Assembly: GCF_006345805.1 (NCBI RefSeq) | Contig: NC_042997.1 | Span: forward strand, 20,646,001-20,710,000 | Direction of reading: 5' to 3' | From: Octopus sinensis | Taxonomy: Eukaryota | DNA: 64,000 nucleotides | In this document: one piece after another, positions 3,753-63,790 of the stretch | Layout of the letters: every line of letters starts with the position of its first letter | How positions within the stretch are numbered: the stretch's first letter is position 1 | Program-made: the position numbers and the translations under genes | The notes under the pieces: generated by a model | Databases searched by the model: none | What the model was told of the DNA's origin: nothing | The model's input: only the letters and a program-made list of their open reading frames with translations

Positions 3753-4170
3753 CTAGGGTGGTAGGAGTTATCTCTCATTGCAATAAATATTGAGTGCAAG
3801 AAGTGCACTGAATTAACCAGCTGGAGATGTCTTCCTAAGGTTAAAATAGCAGTATTGATGTCTCTTAGAGGAAAGCCACATTAAAGTGGTCATAAACAAA
3901 TACTTATATATATATGTATAAATATATATATATATTATTCTTTTACCTGTTTCAGTCATTTGACTGCAGCCATGCTGGAGCACTACCTTAAAGGGTTTTA
4001 GTTGAAGAAATCGACCCCAGGGCTCATTCTTTGTAAGCCTAGTACTTATTCTATTAGTCTCTTATCGCTGAACTGCTAAGTTACAGGGACATAAACACAC
4101 CAGCATCGGTTGTCAAGCAATGGTGGGAGGACAAACAGACACACATAAATATATGCACACACATATATGT

Positions 4171-4216
<46 letters not shown>

Positions 4217-4240
4217 AGTGTAGATCGTATATGAGTGGGT

Positions 4241-4651
4241 ATATATTTATAAAAAAGAAGTTTCAAAACGCCACTATATAAGATAAATTTTAATTTTCTT
4301 TGAAATTTTACACGTTTCAGTTCTTCTTGAAAAAACGAACCTTATCAAAAATATTTTAAAAAGTTAAGTGTAATTAAAAAGTTCATAATTGTTTCTTACT
4401 GGTCTGAACAATTATGAACTTTTTTATTACACTCAAGTTGAAAGTTACAGCTATTATACTCACTACCGACAAAACACCACCACATGGATTCTGTTGAGAC
4501 CAGTAAGAAACAATTATGAACTTTTTTATTACACTTAACTTTTTTAAATATTTTTGATAAGGTTCGTTTATTTCAAGAAGAACCAAAACATGTAAAATTT
4601 CTAAGGAAATTAAAATTTATCTTATATAGTGGCGTTTTCAAACTTCTTTTT

Positions 4652-4662
<11 letters not shown>
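4241..4662. mobile_element. Fold-back element (~165-bp inverted arms, ~90-bp spacer) in a (TA)n tract; each arm carries a U3-A8 hammerhead-like motif
   Basis: Arms 4241-4405 and 4497-4662 are reverse complements; motif TTGATAA-GGTTC-loop-GAAC(C/T)-(G/A)AAA-C(GT/AT)G-TA in both. Confidence 0.75.
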
Positions 4663-4688
<26 letters not shown>

Positions 4689-5382: not shown

Positions 5383-5775
5383 AAGTGGCTGTGTGGTAAG
5401 TAGCTTGCATACAAACCACATGGTTCCAGGTTCAGTCCCACTGCATGGTGCTTTGGGCAAGTGTCTTCTACTATAGCCTCGGGCCGACCAAAGCCTTGTG
5501 AGTGGATTTGGTAGACGGAAACTGAAAGAAGACCATCGTATGTATATGTATGTGTGTGTGTGTTTGTGTGTCTGTGTTTGTCCCCCAACATCGCTTGACA
5601 ACCGATGCTGGTGTGTTTACGTCCCCGTAACTTAGCGGTTCAGCAAAAGAGACCAATAGAATAAGTACTAGGCTTACAAAGAATAAGTCCTGGGGTCGAT
5701 TTGCTCGACTAAAGGTGGTGCTCAAGCATGGCCACACTCAAATGACTGAAACAAGTAAAAGAGTAAAGAGTAAAG
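5383..5775 (+). mobile_element. tRNA-derived SINE family A (internal TA/TG microsatellite, tail ..cagcatggcc.cagtcaaatgactgaaacaagtaaaagag); copies at ~3940-4855(-), 21225-21600(-), 22480-23015(+), 26262-26690(+), 38195-38595(+), 43655-44330(-), 47400-48830(-)
   Basis: A-box-like gtggctgtgtggtaag and B-box-like ggttcagtccc; near-identical body in all copies; resembles described octopus SINEs (recollection). Confidence 0.9.
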
Positions 5776-20664: not shown

Positions 20665-21455
20665 TGCATATGCATAGGTATATATGTATGTATATGTATA
20701 TATATACACACACAGAGAAAAGGGAAGGATTTTGACCTTTTGAGCATAGCTCTTCACCAGAAAGGTAAATGGAAAAATCCAGAGATGGAAATATATTATC
20801 AACAGCACGTGTAGTTAGTATATATGTATACATGCACACATACATGCATGTATATATATTTCTTTACTACCCACAAGGGGCTAAACATAGAGGGGACAAA
20901 CAAGGACAGACAAAGAGATTAAGTCGATTACATCGACCCAATGCGAAACTGGTACTTTATTTATCGACCCCAAGAGGATGAAAAGCAAAGTCGACCTCAG
21001 CTGAATTTGAACTCAGAACGTAACGGCAGACGAAATACTGCAAAGCATTTCGCCCGGCATGCTAATGTTTCTGCCAGCTCGCTGCCTGTATATATTATAC
21101 ACACAAACAGACATACATGCACACACACAGAGACATACATGCACACATGCACCCACACTCACAGACATACATGCACACATGCGTGCACACACACACACAC
21201 ACACGTTTTTTTCCTTTATTCTTTTACATGTTTCAGTCATTTGACTGTGGCCATGCTGGAGCACTGCCTTGAAGGATTTTTAGTTGATTAAATTGACCCA
21301 AGAACTATTTTCGAAGCCTAGTACTTATTCTATTGGTCTTTTTTGCTGCACTGCTAAGTTGCAGGGAATGTAAACACACCAACACCATTTGTCAATCAGT
21401 GACGGGGAGGACAAACACAAACACAAAGATATACACATAGATATATACATACATG

Positions 21456-25646: not shown

Positions 25647-26415
25647 AGAAAGATACTCTGACATAATATTGCTGTCAAAACAGTGCCAGTCATCTTGCAA
25701 TAGTTGTCACTGTCTGACTTTATGTTCTGAGTTCAAATTTTGCCAAGGTCGACTTTGCCTCTCATCCTTTTAGGCTCAGTAAATTAAATACAAGTTGCGT
25801 CCTGGGGTCAATCTAATCGACTGGCCCCCGCCCTCAAAATTTCAGGCCTTGTGCCTAGAGCAGAAAAGAATACTTGTCACTGGAACCTACTATTTGATAT
25901 GCAGACTGTGTGATATTCAGTTACCTACATGATAATTTAATAAGCAAGCATTTCAGTTGAGAGAAAAGCTGAAATACTTATTGTCAAAACCAATTCATAT
26001 TAATTTACTTAAGTATATCTATAAATTTATAAATATATATATATATATGTATGTGTGTTAACACATACACATAAATGTTCAAATAAGGTTGTTATTTTAA
26101 TGCAAGTGTAAAATTAATAAGACATTTACTGGTGGTGTGATTCTATTCTGTGAGTTGAGTCAAATTTATAATGAAGATCAAGTAATTGGATTGTTCATCC
26201 AGTGTAACTGAAGAAATCCACAGTCAAAATTGAAAATACAGTCAACTTAACTAACATGGGTGCAGGAGTGGCTGTGTGGTAAGTAGCTTGCTTACCAACC
26301 TCATGGTTCTGGGTTCATTCTCACTGTGTGGCACCTTGGGCAAGTGTCTTCTACTATAGCCTCGGGACAACCAAAGTCTTGAGAGTGGATTTGGTAGACG
26401 GAAACTGAAAGAACC

Positions 26416-26494
<79 letters not shown>

Positions 26495-26756
26495 ATGTGT
26501 TTGTGTTTGTCTCCCCAACATCGCTTGAAAACCGATGGTGGTATGTTTACGTCCCCATTACTTAGCAGTTTGGCAAAAGAGACCGACAGAATAAGTACTA
26601 GGTTTACAAAGAATAAGTCCTGGGGTCGATTTGCTCGACTAAAGGCAGTGATCCAGCATGACCAGTCTAATGACTGAAACTGGTAAAAGAGAATCGATTT
26701 GTCTGTCTGTTGGTATGCAAAAATATATATATGTAAGTTATAATGTTATGCATAAA

Positions 26757-30736: not shown

Positions 30737-31712
30737 ATCATCATCATCATCATCATTTAGCATCCGCTTTCCATGCTAGCATGGGTTGGACGGTTCAACT
30801 GGGGTCTGTGAAGCCAGAAGGCCCAGTCTGATCTGGCAGTGTTTCTGCGGCTGGATGCCCTTCCTAACGCCAACCACTCCGTGAGTGTAGTGAGTGCTTT
30901 TTACGTGCCACATGCACAGGTGCCAGACGGAGCTGGAAAACGGCCACGGACGGATGGTGCTTTTTATGTGCCACCGGCACGAGGCCAGTCGGGGTGGTGC
31001 TGGCAACGGCCACGAACGGATGGTGGTGCCAGGCGAGGCTGGCAACGGCCACGAATGGATGGTGCTTTTTACGTGCCACAAGCACGAGGCGAGTCTGGGT
31101 GGTGCTGGCAACGCCCACATTCAGATGGTTCTCTTACGTGCCACTGGCATTGGTAACTCAGCTGCAATTTCCATTGATCGATTTCGATTCTGATTCTCAC
31201 TTGCCTCAACAGGTCTTCACAAGTAGAGTTTTGTGTCCCAAGAAGGGAAGGTATGCATAAGTGGGCTGGCTACATCCCATGTAGAAGGCCATGGGTTATG
31301 GTCTCACTTGTCCTGCTGAGTCTTCTCATGCACAGCATACTTCCAGAGGTCTCGGTCTCTAGTTATTTCCTCAGTGAGACTTAAATTTCGAAGGTCGTGC
31401 TTCACCACCTCGTCCCAGGTTTTCCTGGGTCTGCCTCTTCCACAGGTTCCCTCAACCGCTAGGGTGTGGCACTTTTTCACACAACTATCTTCATCCATTC
31501 GCGCCACATGCCCATACCAGCGCAAACGTCTCTCTTGCACACCACAACTGATGCTTCTTAGGTCCAGCTTTTCTCTCAAGGTACTTACACTCTGTCAAGT
31601 ATGAGTACTGACATTACACATCCATCTGAGCATACTGGCTTCATTTCTTGCGAGCTTACGCATATCCTCAGCAGTCACGGCCCATGTTTCACTGCCATGT
31701 AACATGACTGTT
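30737..31712 (-). mobile_element. RTE-clade LINE 3' end (RT C-terminus, 3' UTR, (ATG)n tail)
   Basis: CVRTVMLHGSETW, RRLRWYGHVARM, GRGRPRKTW; the UTR contains tandem atggtgcttttatgtgcc repeats; cat-repeat tail at 30737-30757. Confidence 0.92.
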
Positions 31713-32249: not shown

Positions 32250-33539
32250 CAAGGGACGTTCAATAAGTAATGCCTCTGACCCACTTGCAGTTGTTGGATC
32301 TAGCTGAAATTTTGCATGTGCAATCATTTATATCTCTATATTGTAAGTGGCAAATTACAGCTCTGAACTAATTGTGGTTTCTGATTTACAGGTGTTTGAA
32401 CCGAGTCAAGTGTGAAATGGAGCCTGTTGAGTGTCAAGCAGGGAATCGGTTTTTTTATTTGAAAGGACGCACACCACGGGAGACTTTTGATGAAATGAAA
32501 GTAACTTATGGTGATGATGCCCCATCATATGACCTTGTAAAAGGCTGGCATCGTGAATTCAAACATGGTCGGAACTCTGTGGAAACAGCTCCCAGATCTG
32601 GTCGCCCCTTCTGCCATTGATGAGGCATCTGTCCGTCAAGTTGAGGCTGCCATTTTGGAAGATCGACGCATAATCATTCGCCAAATAGCCCATGAGGTCA
32701 AGATTAGTACCGGGTCTGTGGAAACTATCATTCATGACCAATTGCATATGCAAAAGGTGTCTGCCAGATGGATTCCCAGATTGCTCACACCTTTCCAGAA
32801 GCAAGAACGCGTTGAGTGCTCGAGGGTGAATTTGGAGATGTGCCAAGAAGATGAGTCAAAATTTTTCAAAAGACTGATTACACAGGATGAAACCTGGGTC
32901 CATCACGATGATCCAGAGACCAAAGCCCAGTCAATGCAGTGGAAGCACCGTGACTCACCCCCTCCAAAGAAGGCAAGGGTGCAGCCCTCCGCTGGCAAGG
33001 TCATGCTCACAGTCTTCTGGGACCAGGACGGAGTAGTGATGACAGATTTCCTGGCAAAGGGTACCACAATTGCAGGAGCCTATTATGCTTCACTTTTGAG
33101 GAAATTAAGAGAAGTTATCAAAATCAAGAGGTGGGGCAAGATCAGCAAAGACATCCTCCTCCTGCAGGACAACGCTCCGGTCCACAACTCGCTTGTCGCC
33201 AGATCAGAAGCACAGGCGTATGGCTATGAACTCCTCCCCCATCCCCCTACTTTCCTGACCTTGCACCCTCTGATTTTCACCTCTTCCCAGTCATGAAGTT
33301 GTTTTTGAAAGGAAAGCGTTTCCCAGATGATGCAGCCTTGATTTCTGAAGTCACGTTGAGGTTGGAGGACCAAGCTGGGGTCTTCTACAAAAACGGTCTC
33401 CAGAGCTGCATCAAACAATGGGAGAAATGCGTAACTCTGGATGGTTCCTATGTAGAAAAAGTCTAATAACTGTGCCAAGTTTCGTTGCTCTACTGCTATG
33501 GGAAGTGGGTCAGGGGCATTACTTATTGAACGCCCCTCG
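32250..33539 (+). mobile_element. Mariner (Tc1/mariner, DD34D) DNA transposon, near full length (1290 bp), TA-flanked
   Basis: TIRs c(a/g)aggg(a/g)cgttcaataagtaatgcc(t/c)ctgacccactt at both ends; TA at 32248-32249 and 33540-33541. Confidence 0.95.
32417..33466 (+). pseudogene. Frameshifted mariner transposase
   Basis: MEPVEC...PRSGRP, WIPRLLT, QDETW, QDNAPVH, HPP(Y)FPDLAPSD; 34 residues between the 2nd and 3rd Asp; frameshifts near 32610 and 33248. Confidence 0.92.
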
Positions 33540-37970: not shown

Positions 37971-38813
37971 TATTTGTCATCTGGAGTGTGTTTGCCACAT
38001 ACACAACTTAGCCTAAGTAGTTAGATAGAAGTCTTGGTAAAGACATAACCAGTGTCATTAAGAAATTTACTTTACAACAATCTGTTCCCAGGTTTGATCA
38101 CACAGTGCAAGGAGCAAGTGCCAAGTGTTATCTTAACTTGGTCAATATCTTGTTAGGGAAATTTGGTAGATAGAAATTGTGTAGACACCTATCATAGGCG
38201 CAGGAGTGGCTGTGTGGTAAGTAGTTTGCTTACCAACCACCTGGTTCCGGGTTCAGTCCCACTGCGTGGCACCTTGGGCAAGTGTCTTCTACTTTAGCCT
38301 TGGGCCGACCAAAGCCTCGGGAGTGGATTTGGTAGTTGGAAACTGAAAGAAGCCCATCGTATATATGTATATATATATATATGTGTGTGTGTATGTGTTT
38401 GTGTGTCTGTGTTTGTCCCCCCTCCCCAACATCGCTTGACAACCGATGCTGGTGTGTTTACATCTCCGTAACTTAGCGGTTTGGCAAAAGAGATTGATAG
38501 AATAAGTACTAGACTGGGGTCGATTTGCTCGACTAAAGGTGGTGCTCCAGCATGGCCACAGTCAAATAACTGAAACAAATAAAAGAGTAAAAGAGTATAT
38601 ATATGCCTGAATGTGTGTGTGTGTGTGTGTGTGTGTTTGTGTGTTAAAAGATGCATTGGGTGACATTTTTTCATATTCAAAAGAAGCTCATATGCACGAC
38701 TGCAGTCCAATAACTGAAAACTAGTAGAAGTACAAAAATAATCTCTTTGATTTGTAGGTATGCATACACTTTGCCCATTTGACCATCTGTGGCTTCCGTT
38801 AGAAGAAACCTAC

Positions 38814-41644: not shown

Positions 41645-44600
41645 CTATTTAATAGACACATCTTTTTATGTGCTACTAATAGTTTCATATGCTGAGAAGT
41701 ACCTCAAACATATTCATCAGGCACAAACTACATATCATAGCAAACTAAAAAATGAATAAGAGAAGAAGCACAAAATGTTGAGATGGAAGTATACAGAAAA
41801 CATGGAAGGTTAAAAAACAAAAAACAAAAAATGGAAACTGAAAAAGTAAAAAGCAAAAAAAATGTAAAAGAGTTATCTCCTTTAGACCTTAAATTATAAG
41901 GCTAGAAAGATATCAACAAGTTAATCAGGTGTAGGCGGAATTTTTTAATTCTTCATGTTTACAATTGCTACAGTTCAGTAGTTAGTTAGGGTCTTACATC
42001 TGAAAAGGGTCTGAGCTTTTACAGTTACACATATATACGGACCTCTTTCTTTTGCTGTTTTCCAGATCCACTCCCAGGCTTTGGTCGACCAGGACCTATA
42101 GTAGAAGGCTATTGCCCAAGGTGCTGTACAGTGAGACTGAACCTGCGATCACATGGTTTGGCAGCAAGCTTCTTTACCACACAGCTATGCCTGCCATAAT
42201 CGTACATATTTACCACCGCCTAATACTCAGTGATCAACAAGCCAACGAGAAAACTTCATGATTATATAGTAAGCTAGAAATAGCAACCAAATCTTTCTCT
42301 TATCATATACTACTCTCACAAAGAGGAAGCATAAAGCAGTTATAATTTTACAATTTATTATGCATGCAAAAGTTTGATGGGGTGGTCCCAAATCGGATGC
42401 CTTTAATTATAGGTTCACATTATTAGAGCTAGCATGAAGCTAAATATAACTGTTTAGTAAATGCATAGTTGTGCACTTAAGAAGTTCATTTTGCATGAAT
42501 TGATTCTAGGTTTAGCACCTTGGGCAAATGCTTTTTACAACAGCTTCTGGTTGACCAATACATTGTAACTGGAACTGGGGGGGGGGGGAACTGGATTTTG
42601 ATGTTGGTTCCATATAAAATGCAATTGTGCTGGAGCCACATTAAAAGCACTGGTGTTAGTGCCACATAAAAAAGCACCCAGTATACTCTGTGGAGAAGTT
42701 GGCATTAAGAAGGGCATTCCAACTTTGGAAACCATGCCAGAACATATGCTGGTGATTGGTATGGCCTCATGGCCTTACCAGCTATGGTCAAACCATCCAA
42801 ACCATGCTAGCATGGAAAATGGATGTTGAATTACGATGATGATGATGATGATGAGGATGAAGACTATTACATGCACAAACATGAAAAAACATACCCTCCA
42901 TTATTACTATTGTCAAACAATGAAACACTGAATATCACCATTGTAGACTCAGAACCAATGACTAGTTATGATATAAAACAATAAACAAACAACTCATTAA
43001 CAGTAAACATCAATGTCAAATTTATCTATTAATAACTGGACAAAGCTACCACATCTTTAAGTATTGTAAGTTAATGTGTGCTTGGCAAGAATTATTTTTA
43101 TCAAACAGTAGCAAACAGTGAGGTATCTTTTCTTACATGCTAAACTATGCAACATTTGGTTAGAGCAGTATTAACATAGTTAATGTCATTAGCTAAAGAA
43201 TTTTAACAAATTAGAATTATATTACATCCAAGAAATTTAACCAGTTAAAGCAACATTTTACAGCAAAAGGATTATAACAAATTAAAATTATATCATTACA
43301 GCAAGAATTTTTAGCTAATCAAAATTAATTTAATGATCACTTTGTTATAAGAAAGGCAAAGAGAGGCAACACCTAAATTTTAATTAAATAAAATTAATTA
43401 AAAGCAGAATGTAAGCAATGTGTTTTTAACGACTTAGAGGGAAAAGAGCAATGCCTATAACTCCGATAAGGGCTTCCAAAATTCATGAGATGAAACAAAC
43501 CTGAATGCAAAAGCCTGCAGCAGAGTGGGGTCTAGTAAAAGCATAAGGGCCAATCGCTAGTGTTATACTGAGCAACGGTTGAGCTTATCACTCAAGAAAA
43601 GAAGTGTGAGTCTGATTATGGCAGCTGAGTGATGACTCTAGTCTAAGATATTACTCTTTTACTTGTTTCAGTCATTTGACTGTAGCTATGCTGGAGCACC
43701 GCCTTTAGCTGAGCAAATCGACCCTAAGACTTATTCTTTGTAAGCCTAGCACTTATTCTATCGGTCTCTTTTGCCGAACCACTAAGTTACGGGGATGTAG
43801 ACACACTAGCATTGGTTGTCAAGCGATGTTGGGGGGACAAAACAGACACACAAACACACACACGCAGACACGCACACACACACAGACATGCACACACACA
43901 CACACACACACATATATACATACATATATATGACGGGCTCCTTTCTGTTGCCGTCTACAAAATCTACTCACAAGTCTTTGGTTAGCCCGAGGCTATAATA
44001 GAAGGCGGTGAGCTGGCAGAAACGGTAGCACACTGGGCGAAATGCATAGCCGTATGTCGTCTGGCATTATGTTCTGAGTTCAAATTCTGTCGAGGTTGAC
44101 TTTGCCTTTCATCCTTTTGGGGTTGATAAATTAAGTACCAGTTACACACTGGGGCCAATGGAATCGACTTAATCGCTTTGTCTGTCCTTGTTTGTCCCCT
44201 CTGTGTTTAGCCCCTTATGGGTAGTAAAGAAATATATAATAGAAGACACTTGCCCAAGGTACCACGCAGTGGGACTGAACCCAGAACCATGTGATTAGTA
44301 AGCAAGCTACTTACCACACAACCACTCCTATGCCTAGTCTAAGATATCTTCAACAACTTTTTATAAAGCCTCTTTACTAAAGCATAACTATCAATAAATG
44401 TCTTGTCTAAAATATTAGGTATTTCTTCTCATCAATTAAGCGAAATATATCTGCCTTTTTTCTTTGTGAGTGGTGAGGGGTTGGGTAAGGTTTTGATCAG
44501 TCACTTTAAACCTTACTCCTTTGTGAAGTTTGTTGTCAATGTTTTTAATCTTTCAGAAATATCTTCAGTTTTTCTTTGATAGCTTTTAATTTAACCATTT

Positions 44601-45039: not shown

Positions 45040-45580
45040 ATGAAATTATTGTATACAGTACTCAGGTGCACTACAACTTGTCAAAAGTGCGTATAAAGCA
45101 TATGCAGTAATGTACAAATGTCTGGAAAGTGAACAGTGTATGAGTCAGATACATGCTTGTGTGTGTATGGAGGGGAGAAAATCAGGTATAGTGTTGGTGA
45201 ATCCCAGGAAGCATGGAAGTTTTGAAGAATGCAGTGCTCCAACAACTAACAACTTATGCCAGCAGTTTGTTCCATACTTCAGCAACTCTTAGCATGAAAA
45301 AATGTTTCCAAAAGTCATGGGAGCTGTGCTGTTTTCTGACTTTGTAAACATGTCCACAGGTGTTAGACAGGTGGAGTTTGAAAAGGTGCTCAGAGTTATT
45401 GTTAGTAAGATGATTAATAATTTTATGGGTGTCTGCCAAGTCAGCTGCCAGACATCGAAGTTTCAATGTATCCATGCCCAGGGAAGTAAGGCACTCAGAA
45501 TATGACAAATGCCTGATGGAGGGTATTCTCTTGGTTGCATGTTGCTGAACGGTTTCCAGATGATTAATATCCTGTGCAAG
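45040..45580 (-). mobile_element. CR1-clade LINE 3' fragment with 3' UTR; second UTR-only copy at ~45860-46085
   Basis: DINHLETVQQHATKRIP..LSYSECL..LGMDTLKLR..ADL..THKI...FFMLRVAEVWNKL is the classic CR1 RT C-terminus. Confidence 0.88.
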
Positions 45581-47647
45581 AAAATAATAAAGTTAATTTG
45601 TTATTTGCATTTACAACAAAACCTATTTAATAAATGAATCAGTTCCCATATTCATTGTGAAAATATTGGATATATTTTCAAATGAAGCAATTTCATGTCC
45701 TATGTCTATATTCTAAATTCTTTTGGTGAGATTTAGCTGATTGAAATATAATAAATGAAATTATTGGAACATAGAAATTTTTCCTTTGAAATTGTAATTA
45801 TTAGATTTTATATATTACTGCAGTTATAGAATAGTAATAAATCCTTACTTAAAATAATAACAATAATAATAATAATAATGAAATGATTGTATACAGTGCT
45901 CAGGTGCACCACAACTTGTCAAAAGTGCATATAGAGTATATGCAGTAATGTACAAATGCCTGGAAAGTTAACAGTGTATCAGATATATGCTTGCGTGTGT
46001 ATGGAAGGGAGAAAATCAGGTATAGTGTTGGCGAATCTCAGGAAGCATGGAAGTTTTGAAGGATGCAGTGCTCCGACAACTAACAACTGATGCTGGCAGT
46101 TTGTTAACTATTTGAATAAACAAAAAACACATTATGATAAAAATAACAGCAATATCAATAGCCTTATGGGGTTTAAAATTTCTTCAGGGATACCAATCAT
46201 TTCTTTGAATTCTTGAAGGAATAAGTTTCTCATTTAGTGAGCAAGTTCATGTAGTTTCTGCAGTGGCTGTTACAAAGGTCTTCAATCATTTTGAGTTGAA
46301 AGAAACATTGGATATCAAGTTATACACTATATGCCTTTATCTGCTAGAAACAGCAGCCAAATCTTCCTCAACCAGCATCACACTATCTTTAAAAAAAAAA
46401 AGAACTTAGATAGAATGTTGCTATTCATACCATGCTTGTAAAACCGACAGAATGGTCACAACAAGAATGTGCTTGATCATAGGTCTTCTACATCAGAACT
46501 AATCTAGGTTAAACAACAACAATAATACTGTATTCATGGTAAGTACAACATAGTCCTGATACAGACTGAAATATGACATATTGAGCTCACAAGTTCTTAG
46601 GGCTATAGCCAAATATTTAATCAATGGTTAATATTTTTCAGTATTTTAGGTTATGATAAACTTCTAATAAATTTGAGTTTGCCAGACACATACAACAACT
46701 TAGCTATCTAATAAACAATACCACCAATTAGATGTTGTTTATTTACAAATCATTATTTACAATTCATTACAATGAATGCATATAATGACATGCATTTTGC
46801 TTTCATCATCATCATCATCGTTTAACGTCCGCTTTCCTTGCTAGCATGGGTTGGACGATTTGACTGAGGACTGGCAAACCAGATGGCTGCACCAGGCTCC
46901 AATCTTGATCTGGCAGAGTTTCTACAGCTGGATGCCCTTCCTAACGCCAACCACTCCGAGAGTGTAGTGGGTGCTATTACGTGCCACCGGCACGAGGGCC
47001 AGTTAGGTGGTACTGGCAACGGTCACAGAAAATCGTGTTTTTTTTTGTATCATTTTGTAGTCTTGCCCTCTTCTTAATTTGTAAGTTACTTAATCAAACA
47101 TTTTTACAGACTTATGGCTGCAGATTTTGTAGGTAAGATTTAAGTCACAGAGTAACGTGGTGACTTTTTATCATTGCATTTTGTCTGTCTGGCATTCTTT
47201 ATGTTTATTTACCTGTCTATCTCTCTAACTATCTGTCTATCCATCTGCTTGTATATCAATTTTTCTTTTGAAACTATATGCAGATGTTTCACAAAATAAT
47301 TAACATGAGAATAATAACTGAAAAGGTGCAAAATGGCTCTTGAATCCCTAAATATGTTAGTCTAAAAATAAAGCATCTAATGTAAAACTTATACTCTTTT
47401 ACTCTTTTATTCTTTTACTTATTTCAGTCATTTGACTGTGGCCATGCTGGAGCATCACCTTTTAGTCAAGCTAATCAACCCCCGGAACATACTCTTTGTA
47501 AGCCAAGTACTTATTCTATTGGTCTCTTCTGCCGAACCGCTAACTTACGGGTACATAAACACACCAGCATCGGTTGTCAAGCGATGTTGGGGGGACATTC
47601 ACAGATACAGAAAACATATACACACACACATACATATATATATATAT

Positions 47648-47685
<38 letters not shown>

Positions 47686-47689
<4 letters not shown>

Positions 47690-48157
47690 AAACAAGTCAA
47701 AAATAGAAAATGCTAAAATAATTTTATAGTGAACATTTCAGTACCGGTTTCGGTCATTTTGAGACCTTTTCAACTGTAACGATTAAATAATTAAATTTAG
47801 AAAAATTAGAAGAAAAGTTTTTTTAAAAGAATATTTCTATAGTAGTGTTCAGATTTAAGTGACATTCTGCCTTTCTCTGACTCCCTTGTTTGCACTTGTG
47901 TGTCCACACACAAGTGCAAACAAGGGAGTCAGAGAAAGGCAGAATGCCACTTAAATCTGAACACTACTATAGAAATATTCTTTTAAAAAAACTTTTCTTC
48001 TAATTTTTCTAAATTTAATTATTTAATCGTTACAGTTGAAAAGGTCTCAAAATGACCGAAACCGGTACTGAGATGTTCACTATAAAATTATTTTAGCATT
48101 TTCTATTTTTGACTTGTTTTTTCATATATATCAACTCGTGTGTTCCTTTTCACCCTT

Positions 48158-48199
<42 letters not shown>

Positions 48200-48634
48200 A
48201 AACAAGTCAAAAATAGAAAATGCTAAAATAATTTTATAGTGAACATTTCAGTACCGGTTTCGGTCATTTTGAGACCTTTTCAACTGTAACGATTAAATAA
48301 TTAAATTTAGAAAAATTAGAAGAAAAGTTTTTTTAAAAGAATATTTCTATAGTAGTGTTCAGATTTAAGTGGCATTCTGCCTTTCTCTGACTCCCTTGTT
48401 TGCACTTGTGTGTCCAACACACAAGTGCAAACAAGGGAGTCAGAGAAAGGCAGAATGCCACTTAAATCTGAACACTACTATAGAAATATTCTTTTAAAAA
48501 AACTTTTCTTCTAATTTTTCTAAATTTAATTATTTAATCGTTACAGTTGAAAAGGTCTCAAAATGACCGAAACCGGTACTGAGATGTTCACTATAAAATT
48601 ATTTTAGCATTTTCTATTTTTGACTTGTTTTTTC
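47686..48634. mobile_element. Tandem pair of ~438-bp near-perfect palindromes (47686-48123, 48196-48634) with four U3-A8 minimal hammerhead motifs
   Basis: 218-bp arms with a 2-3 nt centre; motif cag-TTGAAAA-GGTC-tcaaaat-GACC-GAAA-CCGG-TA-ctg at 48033-48070 and 48544-48581 (+), 47739-47776 and 48249-48286 (-). Confidence 0.8.
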
Positions 48635-49734
48635 ATATATATCAACTCGTGTGTTCCTTTTCACCCTTATACATATATATATATATATACATATATACGA
48701 CAGGCTTCTTTTAGTTTCTGTCTACCTGGTTGGCCCGAGGCTATAGTAGAAGACACTTGCCGAAGATGCCATGCAGTGGAACTGAGCCCAGAACCATGTG
48801 GTTCATAAGCAAGCTACTTCTACGCTTATGCTGATAATAAAACTGATGGTGAGAAAGTATAGATGATTAATGAAAATTGAACTTACCAAGTAGAAGTTTG
48901 AACATGACCTGATCATTTAATGTATAATGGTTTATTGAGGAAGTGTAGATATTACTGTTGCTGAAATGACAAACATTTCCTCTAAGAACATTTAAAATTC
49001 AATAACTACGTGATATTAAGATGCATTGTGGCAGACAAATATAATGAGAAGAGGAAATTGTTGAATAATTTTGATTGATTAGAAAAATTGTAAGATTTAT
49101 TATTTGATTTAGCAGCTACTTAAATATACTTCATGTCAGAAATATAAGTTTTTGGACAACATATTTTCAGTATTAATTTTGTTATATTTTTTATTTGAAA
49201 TAAAAGCCTCATAATTAATTAACCAACATTAAAGTGTCTTCAATTTTCTTCTTTCTCTTCTTTCAATTTGCACTTAAGATAATTAAGCTGATTAAAATAT
49301 TAATTTGTCCACATGCTGCCAAGTAAGTAAAATACATTTTTCAATCATATATGACTTCAGCTAAGCATCTCTGACCAACCCTGGTGTATACTAAAATCAG
49401 ATAAGTTGAGGATGAGAAATTAAAGGTGTGGGGTATGAAACTAAAATCCAATTAAAGAATGCTGCTAAAGTGTTTCAATTAACTTCATTCGTCTGAATCT
49501 TCTGCTTACTTGGCTTGTCTCAAAAAATATAAGAAAATTGAGTGGATTGTAAGTAATGATTTAAACTATGTAAAATATGACAGAAATGTATAGATGCTTT
49601 GATAATAAGTTATTATGTTGAAATTATGTTAAAAAGAATATGTCTAGATGCTTGTATTTTTACTAAACATAAAATGACAGTATCATTCAAATCTATTTTC
49701 GAACATCAAAACAGCTGGAAATAATCAAATATAC

Positions 49735-57331: not shown

Positions 57332-58664
57332 TAATAATAATAAATGCCCTGATGCAGTACCAGGTAGTGGCTCTCATGGCTTCTGATCTTAACTGATTGG
57401 AAGTGTTATCATGTACATTGTTTTGTCTTGGTATAAAAGATGGGCTACAGCAAATATTCTGCTCAATACCACAGATTTGCTTGTCAGTTGTTTGACCTTA
57501 ACCAGTTGAGCATGTCCCTTAGTGGCTGACGATATGTGCATCTCTGATCACGAGCAGAAGTAGTGGGGGAGCATCATAGCCATGTGTTGAGAAGGATTCT
57601 TTGGGGTTTTGAATAATTCACCTCTGGAAACATGGGTGTTTCGTTCAACGTCCTTAAACAACCCTTATTCAGGGACCTTTTGAGCAGGATGGGTTACTCG
57701 ATCTGAAGAAAATTCTCACTGGGCTCCACCTGCAAGATCATGTGCTGTTTATCTTGATATGAGATCACCATGTCGTGCACATATGGTTGTGATGGATGTG
57801 CCTGGTGTACCCTTATCAGACCGGTAGTCATGATGAGTATACTGGGCTTCGTATATTTTACCCCAGTGTCACTTTGATGGCATGCTCTGCTCGCTCACTC
57901 AATAATAATAATAATAATAATAATATTAATAATAATAATAATGATAATAAAAGAAATGGAGAAACTTTCAAAATACAAAGACCTGGAAATAGGGGTAATC
58001 AGAATGTGGAATCTAAAAGCAGAAACAATTCCTATCATAATAGGTGTATTAGGTATGATAAAAAAATATTCAGACAAATACATAGCAAAAACACCAGGAC
58101 TTACAAACACATATAACATACAGAAAATTGCACTACTAGGCACTGCACACATCCTACGCAGAACACTTTCCATACAATAACCATCAGAGCATCACAACAA
58201 ATCACAGCACATACCCGAGGCACACAGAGCTGCGCTCGGTAGTGAAGTGAAAGCACGATATAAAAAATATACTACTGAATAATAATAATAATAATAATAA
58301 TGATAATAGCAAGTGTCTCCACCATGTAGCATCTACAATAGAGTGGACGAAACCATTGCCCATATCATGAATGAATGTCCTAGACTCACCCAAAAACCAC
58401 TACAAGTTGTGGTGACATGACCAGGTAATTGTAGTGTGAAAAGTGGGGGTCAAAGAGGCAAGATGTGGTATGAGTACAGGCCGCAGAGAGTGGCAGAGTC
58501 TGAGACTAGCAAAATCCTCTGGGATTTCCTAATCCAAACAGATCAGGTACTACAGCATAACAGACCGGACCTTGTGGTGGTGGACAAGGTTCACTACATA
58601 TGCTATATAGTTAACGTTGTATACCCCTTTGACCCACGAATAGTCAAGAACGAAGACAAAAAGG

Positions 58665-58718
<54 letters not shown>

Positions 58719-63099: not shown

Positions 63100-63790
63100 G
63101 TCACAAATTGGATTGGAAAATGTGAGAAAATTGTATGCACATGAGCCAAAGAGTGTGATAAAACATGACAGAGCAAAGATATTTTGGGACTTCATGATCC
63201 AATGTAATGAGGGAATCAAAAATCAGAAATAAGATGTTAGCTAAGTGTGAGGCTTCAAAATAAAAGAAAAGTGATATGAACTCAAGCCAGAGGCTGTGAC
63301 AGAAAATGAGAATTATAGGATCTTGCAGGACTTCCCCATAAAAATTGGCTGTACAAGTGAAGCAAGTAAACCTAATATGATTATAGAGGACAAAATAAAC
63401 AGTAAGTTCACAGATTTTGCAGTTCTATATGATAGCAGAGTTGGAACTAAAGATACTGGGTGGAAAAAAAATGAGAAATATCAGAATTTAGTCAGAGAGC
63501 TGAAGAGACTGTGGAAGACAAAGTTAACTATTTTGGTGGTAATTAGTGTACTTGGCACAACTCCTAAAGTGCTACCTAAGAGACTAAAAGACATGGGAAC
63601 TGAAATTTGCATTGTTAACATGTACAAAAGTACAATCCTATCTACTGTAAGAATCCTAAGAATGGTTCTTGAGATTTGAGAAGGAATTTTGCCATTAAGC
63701 CTCAAGATAAAATTCTTGCTAATTAAAGTAGCATGTACTAGCTTAATAATGACGACAACCACAATAAATAATCATAACAACAATAATAAT
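63100..63790 (+). mobile_element. R4/Dong-type RLE non-LTR 3' fragments
   Basis: KIFWDFMIQC near 63180; ORF 63296..63679 (RILQDF...KPNMIIEDK...EKYQNLVRELKRLW...ISVLGT...TVRILRMVL); (AAT/AAC)n tail. Confidence 0.85.

What the first reader, a model, noticed from the sequence alone, without database searches (positions are those of the whole stretch)
47686..48634. Fold-back element carrying four minimal U3-A8 hammerhead ribozymes (two per strand)
Seen: two tandem ~438-bp palindromes with 218-bp arms. Each arm contains cag-UUGAAAA-GGUC-ucaaaau-GACC-GAAA-CCGG-UA-cug: stem I CAG/CUG, stem II GGUC/GACC, intact GAAA, self-complementary stem III ACCGGU and a GUA cleavage triplet. Established: the HHR core is C3-U-G-A-N-G8-A with a C3-G8 tertiary pair, so U3 plus A8 is the compensatory swap. 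Minimal type I HHRs with palindromic stem III occur in Penelope-like elements and retrozymes and are thought to act as dimers. Inference: same-strand copies are ~511 nt apart, suited to a double hammerhead that excises a monomer (possibly circularising). That monomer would itself be a ~218-bp perfect dsRNA hairpin, so this could be a self-cleaving, bidirectional fold-back retrozyme and an endo-siRNA source.
Basis: partly seen in the sequence, partly recalled or inferred. Interest (0 to 1): 0.88.

Follow-up and report, generated by a model that had tools for sequence, protein, structure and literature searches.

The report
Truncated Penelope-type hammerhead fold-back insertion
The palindromes and their hammerhead-like motifs are real, but they look like a dead, head-to-head copy of the tail end of a Penelope-like or retrozyme-type retroelement that landed in a TA microsatellite and was later duplicated, which is a known kind of thing, not a new self-cleaving fold-back ribozyme element.

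Summary
Observation confirmed. Window 47686-48634 holds two tandem copies (period 510/511) of a near-perfect palindrome, with 218-nt arms (226 counting a shared TA run). Each arm carries one type-I hammerhead (HHR) motif with a U3-A8 core, an intact GAAA, a self-complementary helix III (ACCGGU) and a GUA cleavage site.

The four motifs are one sequence copied four times. A second, older and diverged fold-back insertion at 4214-4663 supplies an independent relative. It has the same 3' module, the same U3-A8 core, a compensated stem II and a still self-complementary helix III. A descriptor that hits only these two elements scored 0 hits in 400 shuffles, so the motif is a real family feature.

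The architecture matches published Penelope-like element (PLE) insertions:
- inverted 5'-truncated copies
- a one-sided 31-nt "tail"
- a (TA)n target
- an HHR about 57 nt from the 3' terminus

U3-A8 PLE hammerheads, and opposite-strand HHR pairs 100-700 bp apart, were reported in 2014.

The "bidirectional self-cleaving fold-back retrozyme" reading is not supported. In a transcript through the locus, freeing one HHR from the 226-bp hairpin costs about +73 kcal/mol. The tandem copy is a later duplication between TA tracts.

No parent RT/GIY-YIG element or other genomic copies could be retrieved. Verdict: new member of a known kind, modest interest.

The parts
47380..47629 (+). Left half of a dispersed host repeat (SINE-like), ending in a (CA)n/(TA)n tract
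   Evidence: blastn finds 6 paralogues in the window. In the paralogues at 38.3k, 5.5k and 26.4k this half runs through (CA)n(TA)n straight into the right half with no insert, so they act as empty sites.
47630..47685 (.). (TA)n microsatellite, left part of the insertion target
   Evidence: TRF period 2, 28 copies; sequence.
47686..47903 (-). Arm 1L: inverted, 5'-truncated copy of the element's 3' end, without a tail
   Evidence: Inverted repeat I3, 99% complementary; alignment A2.
47739..47776 (-). Hammerhead motif, L-type (stem I 3' strand CUGAAAUG). Core UUGAAAA at 47773-47767; H17 at 47742; predicted cut between 47742 and 47741
   Evidence: Descriptor hit. Rfam HH9 19.7 bits. The isolated 69-nt MFE is hammerhead-shaped, -9.8 kcal/mol.
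47904..47905 (.). Palindrome centre (CC), the turn-around point
47906..48131 (+). Arm 1R: direct, 5'-truncated copy of the element's 3' end. It ends in the terminal motif GACTTGTTTTTTCATA plus TATAT
   Evidence: The terminal motif occurs only at the six arm termini in the window.
48033..48070 (+). Hammerhead motif, R-type (CUGAGAUG). Stem I 48033-35/48068-70; core 48036-42; stem II 48043-46/48054-57; GAAA 48058-61; helix III palindrome ACCGGU 48061-66; A17 at 48067
   Evidence: Rfam HH9 17.7 bits with alignment shown.
48132..48162 (+). One-sided 31-nt 'tail' CAACTCGTGTGTTCCTTTTCACCCTTATACA
   Evidence: Present after both right arms and absent from both left arms. Absent from all paralogues of the host repeat. 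Matches the 30-40 bp PLE tail described in PMC8557442 and PMC11167929.
48163..48195 (.). (TA)16 tract between the two tandem units
48196..48413 (-). Arm 2L (tandem copy of arm 1L), with hammerhead motif at 48286-48249
48414..48416 (.). Centre of the second palindrome (CCA; 1-nt longer than the first)
48417..48642 (+). Arm 2R (tandem copy of arm 1R), with hammerhead motif at 48544-48581
48643..48673 (+). Second copy of the 31-nt tail
48674..48697 (.). (TA)n, right part of the insertion target
48698..48830 (+). Right half of the host repeat (ACGACAGGCTTCTTTTAGTTTC...)
4214..4663 (.). Related, older fold-back insertion (E2) in the (TA)n of another copy of the same host repeat. Layout: 26-nt tail on the left (4214-4239); arms about 4240-4410 and 4492-4663, 85-95% complementary; rearranged centre 4411-4491. 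The U3-A8 hammerhead motif is on the - strand at 4348-4309 (intact GAAA) and on the + strand at 4554-4594 (G12 to A)

Best explanation
The locus is a dead-on-arrival insertion of the 3'-terminal 218-226 nt of a hammerhead-bearing retroelement. The element is of the Penelope-like element (PLE) or animal 'non-LTR retrozyme' type.

How the insertion formed (inferred, except where marked):
1. It landed in the (TA)n tract of a common host repeat (shown).
2. Reverse transcription began near the RNA 3' end and stopped early, giving 5' truncation.
3. The nascent DNA then turned back on itself, or a second priming event occurred on the other strand. This produced a head-to-head inverted pair (the pair itself is shown).
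4. One end kept the element's optional 31-nt 'tail' and the other end did not (shown).
5. Later, unequal exchange or slippage between the flanking TA tracts duplicated the whole unit (palindrome + tail + TA tract).

The hammerhead. Each arm carries the element's type-I hammerhead about 57 nt upstream of the 3' terminus. It has a U3-A8 core variant, a 4-bp helix II with G10.1-C11.1, and a self-complementary helix III (ACCGGU) suited to dimeric 'double-hammerhead' action. In the source element's own non-palindromic, probably tandem transcripts, this ribozyme is or was under selection. Activity itself was not tested.

At this locus the four copies are passengers. A read-through transcript would zip into a 226-bp perfect hairpin in which the ribozyme cannot fold. 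The only plausible RNA-level consequence here is a long dsRNA hairpin.
For: Structure and insertion site:
- Palindromes, period and tail.
- Empty-site paralogues show the insert sits inside the host repeat's (TA)n. The tail belongs to the insert.

The motif:
- It has all invariant HHR positions apart from the U3-A8 swap.
- Chance expectation is 0.003-0.05 per window.
- The weak Rfam HH9 match aligns GUUAC..AG-UGA-AG-UC-CAAAA-GA-CGAAACC-GGU-CUG.

Independent relative E2 at 4214-4663:
- It has the same fold-back shape, the same (TA)n target and a one-sided tail.
- The terminal motif ACTT[GC]TTTTTT[C]ATA is found only at the six arm ends.
- The 3' module (HHR to terminus) aligns significantly: scores 43.5 and 54 against shuffles of 12 +/- 8-9, with 1/500 and 0/500 shuffles reaching the observed score. 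The inner parts of the arms do not align (200/500).
- In E2 the core is UUGAUAA, so only the free position N7 differs.
- Stem II gains a compensated U-A pair (GGUUC/GAACU or GAACC).
- Helix III is ACGUGU or ACAUGU, still self-complementary, and H17 is A.
- The relaxed descriptor hits only E1 and E2, with 0 hits in 400 shuffles.

Folding:
- The L-type 69-mer's MFE is hammerhead-shaped.
- The domain-swapped double hammerhead is -24.9 kcal/mol, against 2 x -9.8 for monomers.
- The full palindrome folds at -356.5 kcal/mol, and freeing one HHR costs +73.

Literature:
- PLE insertions show inverted 5'-truncated copies, a 30-40 bp tail often at one end only, and a (TA)n bias. Canonical HHRs sit in the pLTRs, near the 3' ends, of Hydra-clade and other canonical PLEs (PMC8557442).
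- The tail is the stretch between two internal reverse-transcription start sites, and the PLE protein cleaves and extends both DNA strands (PMC11167929).
- U3-A8 PLE hammerheads, and dual opposite-strand HHRs 100-700 bp apart, are reported as truncated PLEs (PMC4209133). Here the predicted cut sites are about 326 bp (E1) and 285 bp (E2) apart.
- Animal retrozymes are related to PLE pLTRs (bioRxiv 10.64898/2026.07.22.740005).

Order of events: the L/R substitution is shared by both tandem units, so the palindrome predates the duplication.
Against: - No RT or GIY-YIG coding sequence is linked to the element. None was found among the window ORFs tested.
- No other genomic copy or parent element could be retrieved: 0 hits in metagenome, genome and viral contig scans, 0 in exact ORF look-up and 0 in two protein searches. 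The PLE assignment therefore rests on architecture and motif, not on homology to a known PLE.
- Both family members seen are fold-backs (2 of 2). That is also what an intrinsically palindromic TIR element would give.
- A strict snap-back model predicts a tail on both arms. I have to invoke resolution at the internal (TA)4 microhomology, or two different start sites.
- Rfam scores are far below gathering (17.7-19.7 against 52), and Rfam does not call the E2 motif at all.
- Stem I is short (3 bp plus an interrupted 4 bp) in E1 and is A-U only in E2.
- The R-type copy prefers an alternative hairpin (-12.5 kcal/mol).
- Descriptor 2 was widened after I had seen E2.
- Ribozyme activity is untested.
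Confidence: 0.6

Rival explanations
1. This is an intrinsically palindromic DNA element: a MITE or fold-back transposon with long terminal inverted repeats. It targets TA or (TA)n and moves by cut-and-paste. The hammerhead-like motif lies inside each inverted repeat, either as a real RNA motif of unknown role or as part of a transposase-binding subterminal region.
For: - Both family members in the window are fold-backs sitting in (TA)n.
- The two arms of each, and both elements, share a conserved terminal motif of about 22 nt, as TIR families do.
- TA flanks are compatible with a TA target-site duplication.
- From memory, microsatellite-targeting MITEs exist (rice Micron).
- Mariner-type transposase remnants lie in the window.
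Against: - Both elements are asymmetric. A 26-31 nt tail is present at one end only, and the tails look related. A TIR model does not predict this; the PLE model does.
- E1 has essentially no internal region (2-3 nt).
- E1 and E2 share only the outer 100 nt or so, while the inner arm sequence is unrelated. This is the pattern of 5'-truncated copies sharing a 3' module.
- The conserved motif is a full hammerhead core at a fixed distance (56-61 nt) from the terminus, as in PLE pLTRs.
- No hammerhead-bearing MITE has been described, to my knowledge.
Confidence: 0.17
2. This is a functional fold-back retrozyme in which same-strand hammerheads 511 nt apart pair as a double hammerhead. They excise (and perhaps circularise) a monomer that is itself a 218-bp hairpin, on both strands, and this feeds an endo-siRNA pathway.
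For: - Same-strand motifs are 510/511 nt apart.
- Helix III is self-complementary, and the isolated L-type segments favour the domain-swapped double hammerhead: -24.9 against 2 x -9.8 kcal/mol.
- The U3-A8 core is conserved in a relative.
- A transcript would indeed be a long perfect hairpin.
Against: - Each hammerhead strand is fully complementary to the other arm in the same transcript. Forcing one HHR costs +73 kcal/mol, and the stem II pairing probability is about 1e-19.
- The hairpin nucleates at the centre, before the sense ribozyme has been transcribed.
- The tandem arrangement is a local duplication that includes the tail and a TA tract. It is not a head-to-tail retrozyme array, and E2 is single.
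- E2's arms are decaying: G12 to A in one arm and a G.U at 10.1-11.1 in the other.
- There is no evidence of transcription.
Confidence: 0.07
3. The palindrome, the tandem duplication, or both are assembly artefacts. Possible causes are fold-back chimeric long reads or mis-assembly across the TA microsatellite.
For: - The arms are near-perfect, with a 2-3 nt centre.
- The two units differ only by one substitution and a 1-nt homopolymer-type indel, as consensus errors would.
- PMC8557442 notes that PLE tandem/inverted structures cause assembly problems.
Against: - The structure is internal to the window. It is bounded on both sides by the two collinear halves of a host repeat, so it is a clean insertion and not an inverted continuation of flanking DNA.
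- The ends are asymmetric because only one carries the tail.
- A fixed L/R substitution is present in both units.
- An independent, diverged fold-back of the same family exists at 4.2 kb, and its 85-95% arm identity cannot be a read chimera.
- The copy number of the tandem unit (1 or 2) remains unverified.
Confidence: 0.08
4. The hammerhead resemblance is fortuitous or a decayed relic. The U3 and A8 changes are simply two transitions in a dead motif, or the motif never was a ribozyme.
For: - The four copies are one sequence.
- Rfam scores are far below gathering.
- Stem I is weak, and the fold is no more stable than shuffles (z -0.7 and -1.4).
- From the rates, chance descriptor hits would number hundreds to thousands in a Gb-sized genome.
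Against: - An independently diverged relative keeps U3, U4, G5, A6, A8, A9, G12-A14 (in one arm), A15.1, U16.1 and A17. It changes only N7. Stem II carries a compensated insertion, and helix III stays self-complementary (ACCGGU to ACGUGU/ACAUGU).
- The surrounding module is only about 65-70% identical.
- The descriptor gave 0 hits in 400 shuffled windows.
- U3-A8 is a documented natural covariant, reported as active in vitro (PMC3088659; PMC4209133).
Confidence: 0.08

Closest known systems
Hammerheads of Penelope-like elements, including the U3-A8 core covariant and opposite-strand pairs in truncated PLEs (Cervera & de la Pena 2014, PMC4209133)
   Same: - Type-I architecture.
- Very short helix III with a palindromic sequence, implying dimeric action.
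- G10.1-C11.1 pair.
- U3-A8 in place of C3-G8.
- Two motifs a few hundred bp apart on opposite strands.
- Dispersed copies without an ORF.
   Different: - Here helix II is 4-5 bp with no bulged base after A9. This is closer to the 'canonical' metazoan type-I or retrozyme form than to the 7-8 bp helix II min-HHR.
- No linked Cercyon-like or other PLE ORF was found.
- The host organism was not established.
PLE insertion architecture: pLTR, inverted 5'-truncated copy, one-sided 30-40 bp tail, (TA)n target (Craig et al. 2021, PMC8557442; Mob DNA 2024, PMC11167929)
   Same: - Head-to-head inverted truncated copies.
- A tail of 31 nt (26 nt in E2) at one end only.
- Insertion in (TA)n.
- HHR a fixed 56-61 nt upstream of the tail-less terminus and about 95 nt from the tail end. 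The Anolis Poseidon element has reverse-transcription starts roughly 85-92 nt past its HHR cut site.
   Different: - The inserted piece is only 218-226 nt, and both arms are truncated at the same base, making a perfect palindrome. This is not a short inverted copy next to a longer element.
- The paper states the (TA)n preference for Naiads, which lack canonical HHRs. Its Figure 1 legend lists (TA)n as a preferred target, but I could not see for which clades.
Animal non-LTR retrozymes (Cervera & de la Pena 2020, PMC7229834; Li, Clavereau & Pollet 2026 preprint)
   Same: - Small (150-450 bp), AT-rich (arm GC 0.28) non-coding units.
- A canonical-looking type-I HHR whose short palindromic helix III works in dimers.
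- Proposed dependence on PLE machinery.
   Different: - Retrozymes are head-to-tail arrays that yield circular RNA.
- Here each unit is a palindrome, and the two units are separated by a tail and a microsatellite.
Rfam Hammerhead_HH9 (RF02275)
   Same: It is the best-scoring Rfam family. The shared strings are GUUAC, AG-UGA, CAAAA in loop 2, CGAAACC and GGU-CUG.
   Different: - 17.7-19.7 bits against a gathering score of 52.
- Four positions of helix I and the helix III loop are missing.
- The core is U3/A8.
Microsatellite-targeting or palindromic MITEs (for example rice Micron; recalled from memory, not checked)
   Same: A small non-coding inverted-repeat element embedded in (TA)n.
   Different: - A one-sided tail.
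- A hammerhead core.
- Relatives share only the 3' module.

Membership tests
Hammerhead ribozyme (type I) | 5' core box C3-U4-G5-A6-N7-G8-A9 | tested here: inconclusive
   The sequence is UUGAAAA (E1) and UUGAUAA (E2). U4, G5, A6 and A9 are present. C3/G8 are replaced by U3/A8. This keeps the 3-8 Watson-Crick pair and is a documented natural covariant, but it is not the consensus.
Hammerhead ribozyme (type I) | 3' core G12-A13-A14, the A15.1-U16.1 pair and a non-G residue at position 17 | tested here: met
   GAAA, then an A...U pair closing CCGG, then A17 (a GUA site), in all four E1 copies and in the E2 minus-strand copy. The E2 plus-strand copy has G12 to A.
Hammerhead ribozyme (type I) | Three helices around the core, with helix I open | tested here: met
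   - Helix I: CAG/CUG, plus 4 more pairs after an A.A mismatch.
- Helix II: GGUC/GACC, with G10.1-C11.1.
- Helix III: 1 bp in cis, or the 6-bp self-complementary ACCGGU in a dimer.
Hammerhead ribozyme (type I) | Score at or above the curated Rfam threshold for a hammerhead family | tested here: not met
   HH9 scores 17.7-19.7 bits against 52. No gathering-level hit anywhere in the window, and no hammerhead hit for E2.
Hammerhead ribozyme (type I) | Helices supported by compensatory change among homologues | tested here: inconclusive
   Only two independent elements are available. Stem II shows a compensated inserted pair. Helix III goes from CCGG to CAUG/CGUG and stays self-complementary. Stem I is fully changed but is A-U only in E2. 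MAFFT could not place stem II in register.
Hammerhead ribozyme (type I) | Site-specific self-cleavage | not testable with these tools
   Needs in vitro transcription and cleavage assays.
Penelope-like element (insertion of) | ORF with a telomerase-like RT plus a GIY-YIG endonuclease | tested here: not met
   There is no ORF in the element. The window ORFs and stop-free segments tested gave only mariner-type domains. Only a selection of segments was scanned. The locus would be a truncated or non-autonomous copy.
Penelope-like element (insertion of) | Hammerhead motif in the terminal repeat, near the 3' end | tested here: met
   The motif lies 56-61 nt upstream of the arm terminus in both E1 and E2.
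Penelope-like element (insertion of) | 5' truncation with an adjacent inverted copy, or complex tandem/inverted structure | tested here: met
   E1 is a perfect head-to-head pair. E2 is an inverted pair with a rearranged centre.
Penelope-like element (insertion of) | Optional 30-40 bp tail at one end | tested here: met
   A 31-nt tail on the right arms only (E1) and 26 nt on the left arm only (E2). It is absent from empty-site paralogues. E2's tail is slightly shorter than the published range.
Penelope-like element (insertion of) | Microsatellite, (TA)n, insertion bias | tested here: met
   Both elements interrupt the (TA)n of a host repeat.
Penelope-like element (insertion of) | Sequence homology of the module to the pLTR or 3' end of an RT-bearing PLE | not testable with these tools
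   Neither the source genome nor Repbase is available. All external searches were empty.
Animal non-LTR retrozyme | Head-to-tail tandem array of 150-450 bp units, each with one type-I HHR | tested here: not met
   Each unit here is a palindrome carrying both orientations. The two units are separated by the tail plus (TA)16, and E2 is single.
Animal non-LTR retrozyme | Expression as self-cleaved circular RNA | not testable with these tools
   No transcriptome data available.
MITE / fold-back DNA transposon | Symmetric terminal inverted repeats flanked by a target-site duplication | tested here: inconclusive
   Inverted repeats are present and the termini are conserved. However, one end carries an extra 26-31 nt, and a TA duplication cannot be told apart from the (TA)n context.

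The most novel reading that the evidence does not exclude
The fold-back is not an accident of insertion but the family's propagating form. On this reading it is a (TA)n-targeting palindromic element whose two arms each encode a U3-A8 hammerhead. Transcripts from either strand would be processed by the ribozyme, by Dicer, or by both. That would be a hammerhead-bearing element type distinct from both PLEs and head-to-tail retrozymes.
Probability: 0.08. Interest if true: 0.7.

Novelty: new member of a known kind. Interest (0 to 1): 0.3.

Why it matters
If the best explanation holds, the locus is a clean textbook-style example of how PLE-type retroelements insert. One small locus shows the microsatellite target, 5' truncation, the head-to-head copy and the one-sided tail.

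It also adds a family in which the U3-A8 hammerhead core is kept across diverged subfamilies. That supports the view that this core variant is functional and not decay.

It does not open a new question. Its practical value is as an annotation rule: near-perfect palindromes in TA tracts that carry a YUGANRA...GAAA motif are probably truncated PLE or retrozyme insertions, and are liable to be mistaken for MITEs, miRNA hairpins or assembly errors.

Tried and rejected
1. Searches for other copies, all empty:
- arm against window by blastn;
- two metagenome scans, one prokaryote-genome scan and one viral scan;
- exact look-up of 10 arm ORFs;
- two protein searches with concatenated stop-free frames of E1 and E2;
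- look-ups of two window ORFs.
The source genome appears not to be in the searchable collections, so genome-wide copy number and linkage to an RT could not be tested.

2. Rfam microRNA hits on the palindrome centres (MIR6426, mir-4716 and others, 50-71 bits) are all below gathering. They reflect any perfect hairpin and were rejected as miRNA genes.

3. The whole-window Rfam E-value scan was swamped by microsatellite hits. It gave no usable background for hammerhead scores.

4. MAFFT of whole arms (A3) and of the motif alone (A4) mis-registers helix II. I used descriptor output and a global pairwise alignment with shuffles instead.

5. My first cis-only drawing of the HHR dimer is not a valid nested structure. 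It was replaced by the domain-swapped double hammerhead.

6. No supplementary sequence files were held for the two key PLE papers.

7. Organism identity was not established. The flanking repeat resembles, from memory, an abundant octopus SINE. If that is right, PLEs are recently active there (PMC13282606). I ran no further search on this.
Full report
**What is there**

Window 47686-48634 holds two tandem units with a period of 510/511. Each unit is a near-perfect palindrome with arms of 218 nt, or 226 nt if the shared ATATATAT is counted. The palindrome centres are 2 nt (CC) and 3 nt (CCA).

Each palindrome is followed on its right side only by a unique 31-nt stretch, CAACTCGTGTGTTCCTTTTCACCCTTATACA, and then by a TA tract. 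The whole structure is embedded in a (TA)n microsatellite.

The four arms differ at two positions:
- An A/G difference separates both left arms from both right arms, so the palindrome is older than the tandem duplication.
- One further substitution is private to arm 1L.
- The second centre also has a 1-nt indel.

**The motif**

Each arm reads cag-UUGAAAA-GGUC-ucaaaau-GACC-GAAA-CCGG-UA-cug. The positions are + 48033-48070 and 48544-48581, and - 47776-47739 and 48286-48249. These are one sequence copied four times.

Chance expectation:
- A type-I hammerhead descriptor that allows any Watson-Crick 3-8 pair finds nothing else in the window.
- In 300 dinucleotide-preserving shuffles it gives 0.02-0.05 hits per 64 kb, or 0.003 if helix III must be palindromic.

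Rfam finds no family at gathering level anywhere in the window. It does give weak Hammerhead_HH9 matches of 17.7-19.7 bits against a gathering score of 52. The alignment shares the strings GUUAC, AG-UGA, loop-2 CAAAA, CGAAACC and GGU-CUG.

Folding of the isolated segment:
- The left-arm (minus-strand) 69-mer has a hammerhead-shaped minimum-energy fold, -9.8 kcal/mol.
- The right-arm version prefers a competing hairpin, -12.5 kcal/mol.
- The domain-swapped double hammerhead through ACCGGU is worth -24.9 kcal/mol.
- None of these folds is more stable than shuffled sequence.

**An independent relative in the same window**

A scan for inverted repeats turned up a second fold-back insertion, which I call E2, at 4214-4663. 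It sits in the (TA)n of another copy of the same host repeat.

Structure of E2:
- The arms are 85-95% complementary, so it is older.
- The centre is rearranged.
- It carries a one-sided 26-nt extra stretch, this time on the left.

What E1 (the element under review) and E2 share:
- The terminal motif ACTT[GC]TTTTTT[C]ATA occurs in the window only at the six arm ends of the two elements.
- The outer 100 nt or so (hammerhead to terminus) aligns significantly. Scores are 43.5 and 54 against 12 +/- 8-9 for shuffles, and 1/500 and 0/500 shuffles reach the observed score.
- The inner arm sequence does not align.

E2 carries the same motif at the same distance from the terminus:
- core UUGAUAA, in which only the free position N7 differs;
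- helix II GGUUC/GAACU or GAACC, a compensated inserted pair;
- GAAA intact in one arm and AAAA in the other;
- helix III ACGUGU or ACAUGU, still self-complementary;
- A17.

A descriptor widened to allow this (longer loop 2, G.U in helix III) hits only E1 and E2 in the window. It gave 0 hits in 400 shuffled windows. I widened the descriptor after seeing E2, so the figure is generous, but the conclusion is robust. The hammerhead core, including U3-A8, is a conserved feature of a family and not a coincidence or two random transitions. Rfam does not recognise the E2 copy.

**Insertion context**

The flanks of E1 are the two collinear halves of a dispersed repeat. In at least three other copies in the window, that repeat runs ...GTTGGGG-(CA)n(TA)n-TACGATGGGCTTCTTTCAG... 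with no insert.

So E1 is an insertion into the (TA)n tract, and the 31-nt tail came in with it. The two tandem units are separated by the tail plus (TA)16. That fits unequal exchange or slippage between the flanking TA tracts after insertion. It does not fit head-to-tail retrotransposition (inference).

**Comparison with the literature**

All of the unusual features are published hallmarks of Penelope-like element (PLE) insertions:
- Craig et al. 2021 (PMC8557442) describe strong 5' truncation. They also describe an inverted 5'-truncated copy abutting the element, a 30-40 bp tail often at one end only, a bias for (TA)n, hammerheads in the terminal repeats near the 3' end, and the assembly problems that result.
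- The 2024 Mobile DNA study (PMC11167929) shows that the tail is the stretch between two internal reverse-transcription start sites. It also shows that the PLE protein cleaves and extends both DNA strands, and that hammerhead mutants do not impair insertion in vitro.
- Cervera & de la Pena 2014 (PMC4209133) reported the U3-A8 covariant in PLE hammerheads, with about 1,300 hits in Schistosoma mansoni. They also reported pairs of hammerheads 100-700 bp apart on opposite strands, which they attributed to truncated PLEs. Here the predicted cut sites are about 326 bp (E1) and 285 bp (E2) apart.
- Perreault et al. 2011 (PMC3088659) had already noted natural U3-A8 covariation and cited in vitro activity.
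- A 2026 preprint relates animal retrozymes to PLE terminal repeats.

With its 4-5 bp helix II and CAAA-type loop 2, the motif here looks more like the canonical metazoan type-I or retrozyme hammerhead than the long-helix-II PLE min-HHR. I therefore leave open whether the source is a PLE proper or a PLE-mobilised retrozyme-like element.

A transcript through a palindrome folds into a 226-bp duplex:
- The minimum free energy is -356.5 kcal/mol.
- Forcing a single hammerhead costs +73 kcal/mol.
- The ensemble probability of any helix II pair is about 1e-19.

The duplex nucleates at the centre, before the sense ribozyme has been made. The 511-nt same-strand spacing is a by-product of a later duplication, and the relative E2 has no second unit. 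In E2 the two copies are decaying, with G12 to A in one arm and G.U at 10.1-11.1 in the other. This is what passengers in a dead insertion would do. A long hairpin dsRNA is the only RNA-level product I would expect, and only if the region is transcribed. That was not tested.

**What remains open**

- I could not retrieve any other copy or any RT/GIY-YIG parent. The window ORFs I tested show only mariner-type domains. The PLE assignment is therefore by architecture and motif, not by homology.
- Both members seen are fold-backs, so an intrinsically palindromic TA-targeting element (MITE-like) is the main rival. The one-sided and apparently related tails, together with the sharing of only the 3' module, argue against it.
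- An assembly artefact is unlikely for the palindrome itself. The insertion is clean and bounded, there is a fixed L/R substitution, and a diverged sibling element exists. An artefact cannot be excluded for the two-unit copy number.
- The organism was not determined. From memory the host repeat looks like an octopus SINE. Octopus vulgaris is reported to have recently active PLE families (PMC13282606), but this link is unverified.

**Verdict**

The hammerhead identification is supported, and strengthened by a second element. The 'new bidirectional fold-back retrozyme' reading is not supported.

The best explanation is a duplicated, head-to-head, 5'-truncated insertion of the hammerhead-bearing 3' end of a PLE or retrozyme-type retroelement in a TA microsatellite (confidence about 0.6). 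It is a new member of a known kind, of modest interest.

Noticed in passing
window 4214-4663: A second, older fold-back insertion of the same family (E2) sits in the (TA)n of another copy of the host repeat. It has a one-sided 26-nt tail on the left and arms 85-95% complementary. Its centre is rearranged, with a 33-nt direct repeat at 4407-4439 / 4509-4541 and a local hairpin at 4361-4393 / 4407-4439. It carries the U3-A8 hammerhead motif on both strands.
   Followed up: yes
window 3935-4173, 5398-5774, 21206-21451, 26281-26690, 38219-38597, 43651-43871, 47380-47640 and 48690-48830: A dispersed composite repeat (SINE-like) with an internal (CA)n(TA)n tract occurs at least seven times in 64 kb. 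Its microsatellite is the landing site of both fold-back elements. From memory it resembles an abundant octopus SINE; the organism was not verified.
   Followed up: partly
window 32372-33463 (+): A mariner/Mos1-type transposase remnant. Pfam HTH_48 matches 32372-32617 and Transposase_1 matches the 247-aa ORF at 32553-33296. The frame is broken between the parts.
   Followed up: partly
window 47843-47965 and 48356-48474, both strands: The palindrome centres give 50-71-bit Rfam hits to many unrelated microRNA precursor families, all below gathering. This is a generic perfect-hairpin artefact that could mislead automated ncRNA annotation.
   Followed up: yes
window 31307-31594 (-), 45257-45592 (-), 58421-58672 (+), 63275-63676 (+): Stop-free segments that look by eye like retrotransposon (LINE-type) protein fragments. 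Two of them (58.4k and 63.3k) resemble each other. None matched a Pfam family at E <= 0.1.
   Followed up: partly
window 47863 and 47750/48260 vs 48072/48583: Both substitutions among the four E1 arms are transitions. In the sense orientation one is T/C and the other A/G. The A/G change lies in the 3' strand of hammerhead stem I: the left-arm allele (A) gives a U-A pair and a hammerhead-shaped MFE, while the right-arm allele (G) gives U.G and favours a competing hairpin.
   Followed up: partly
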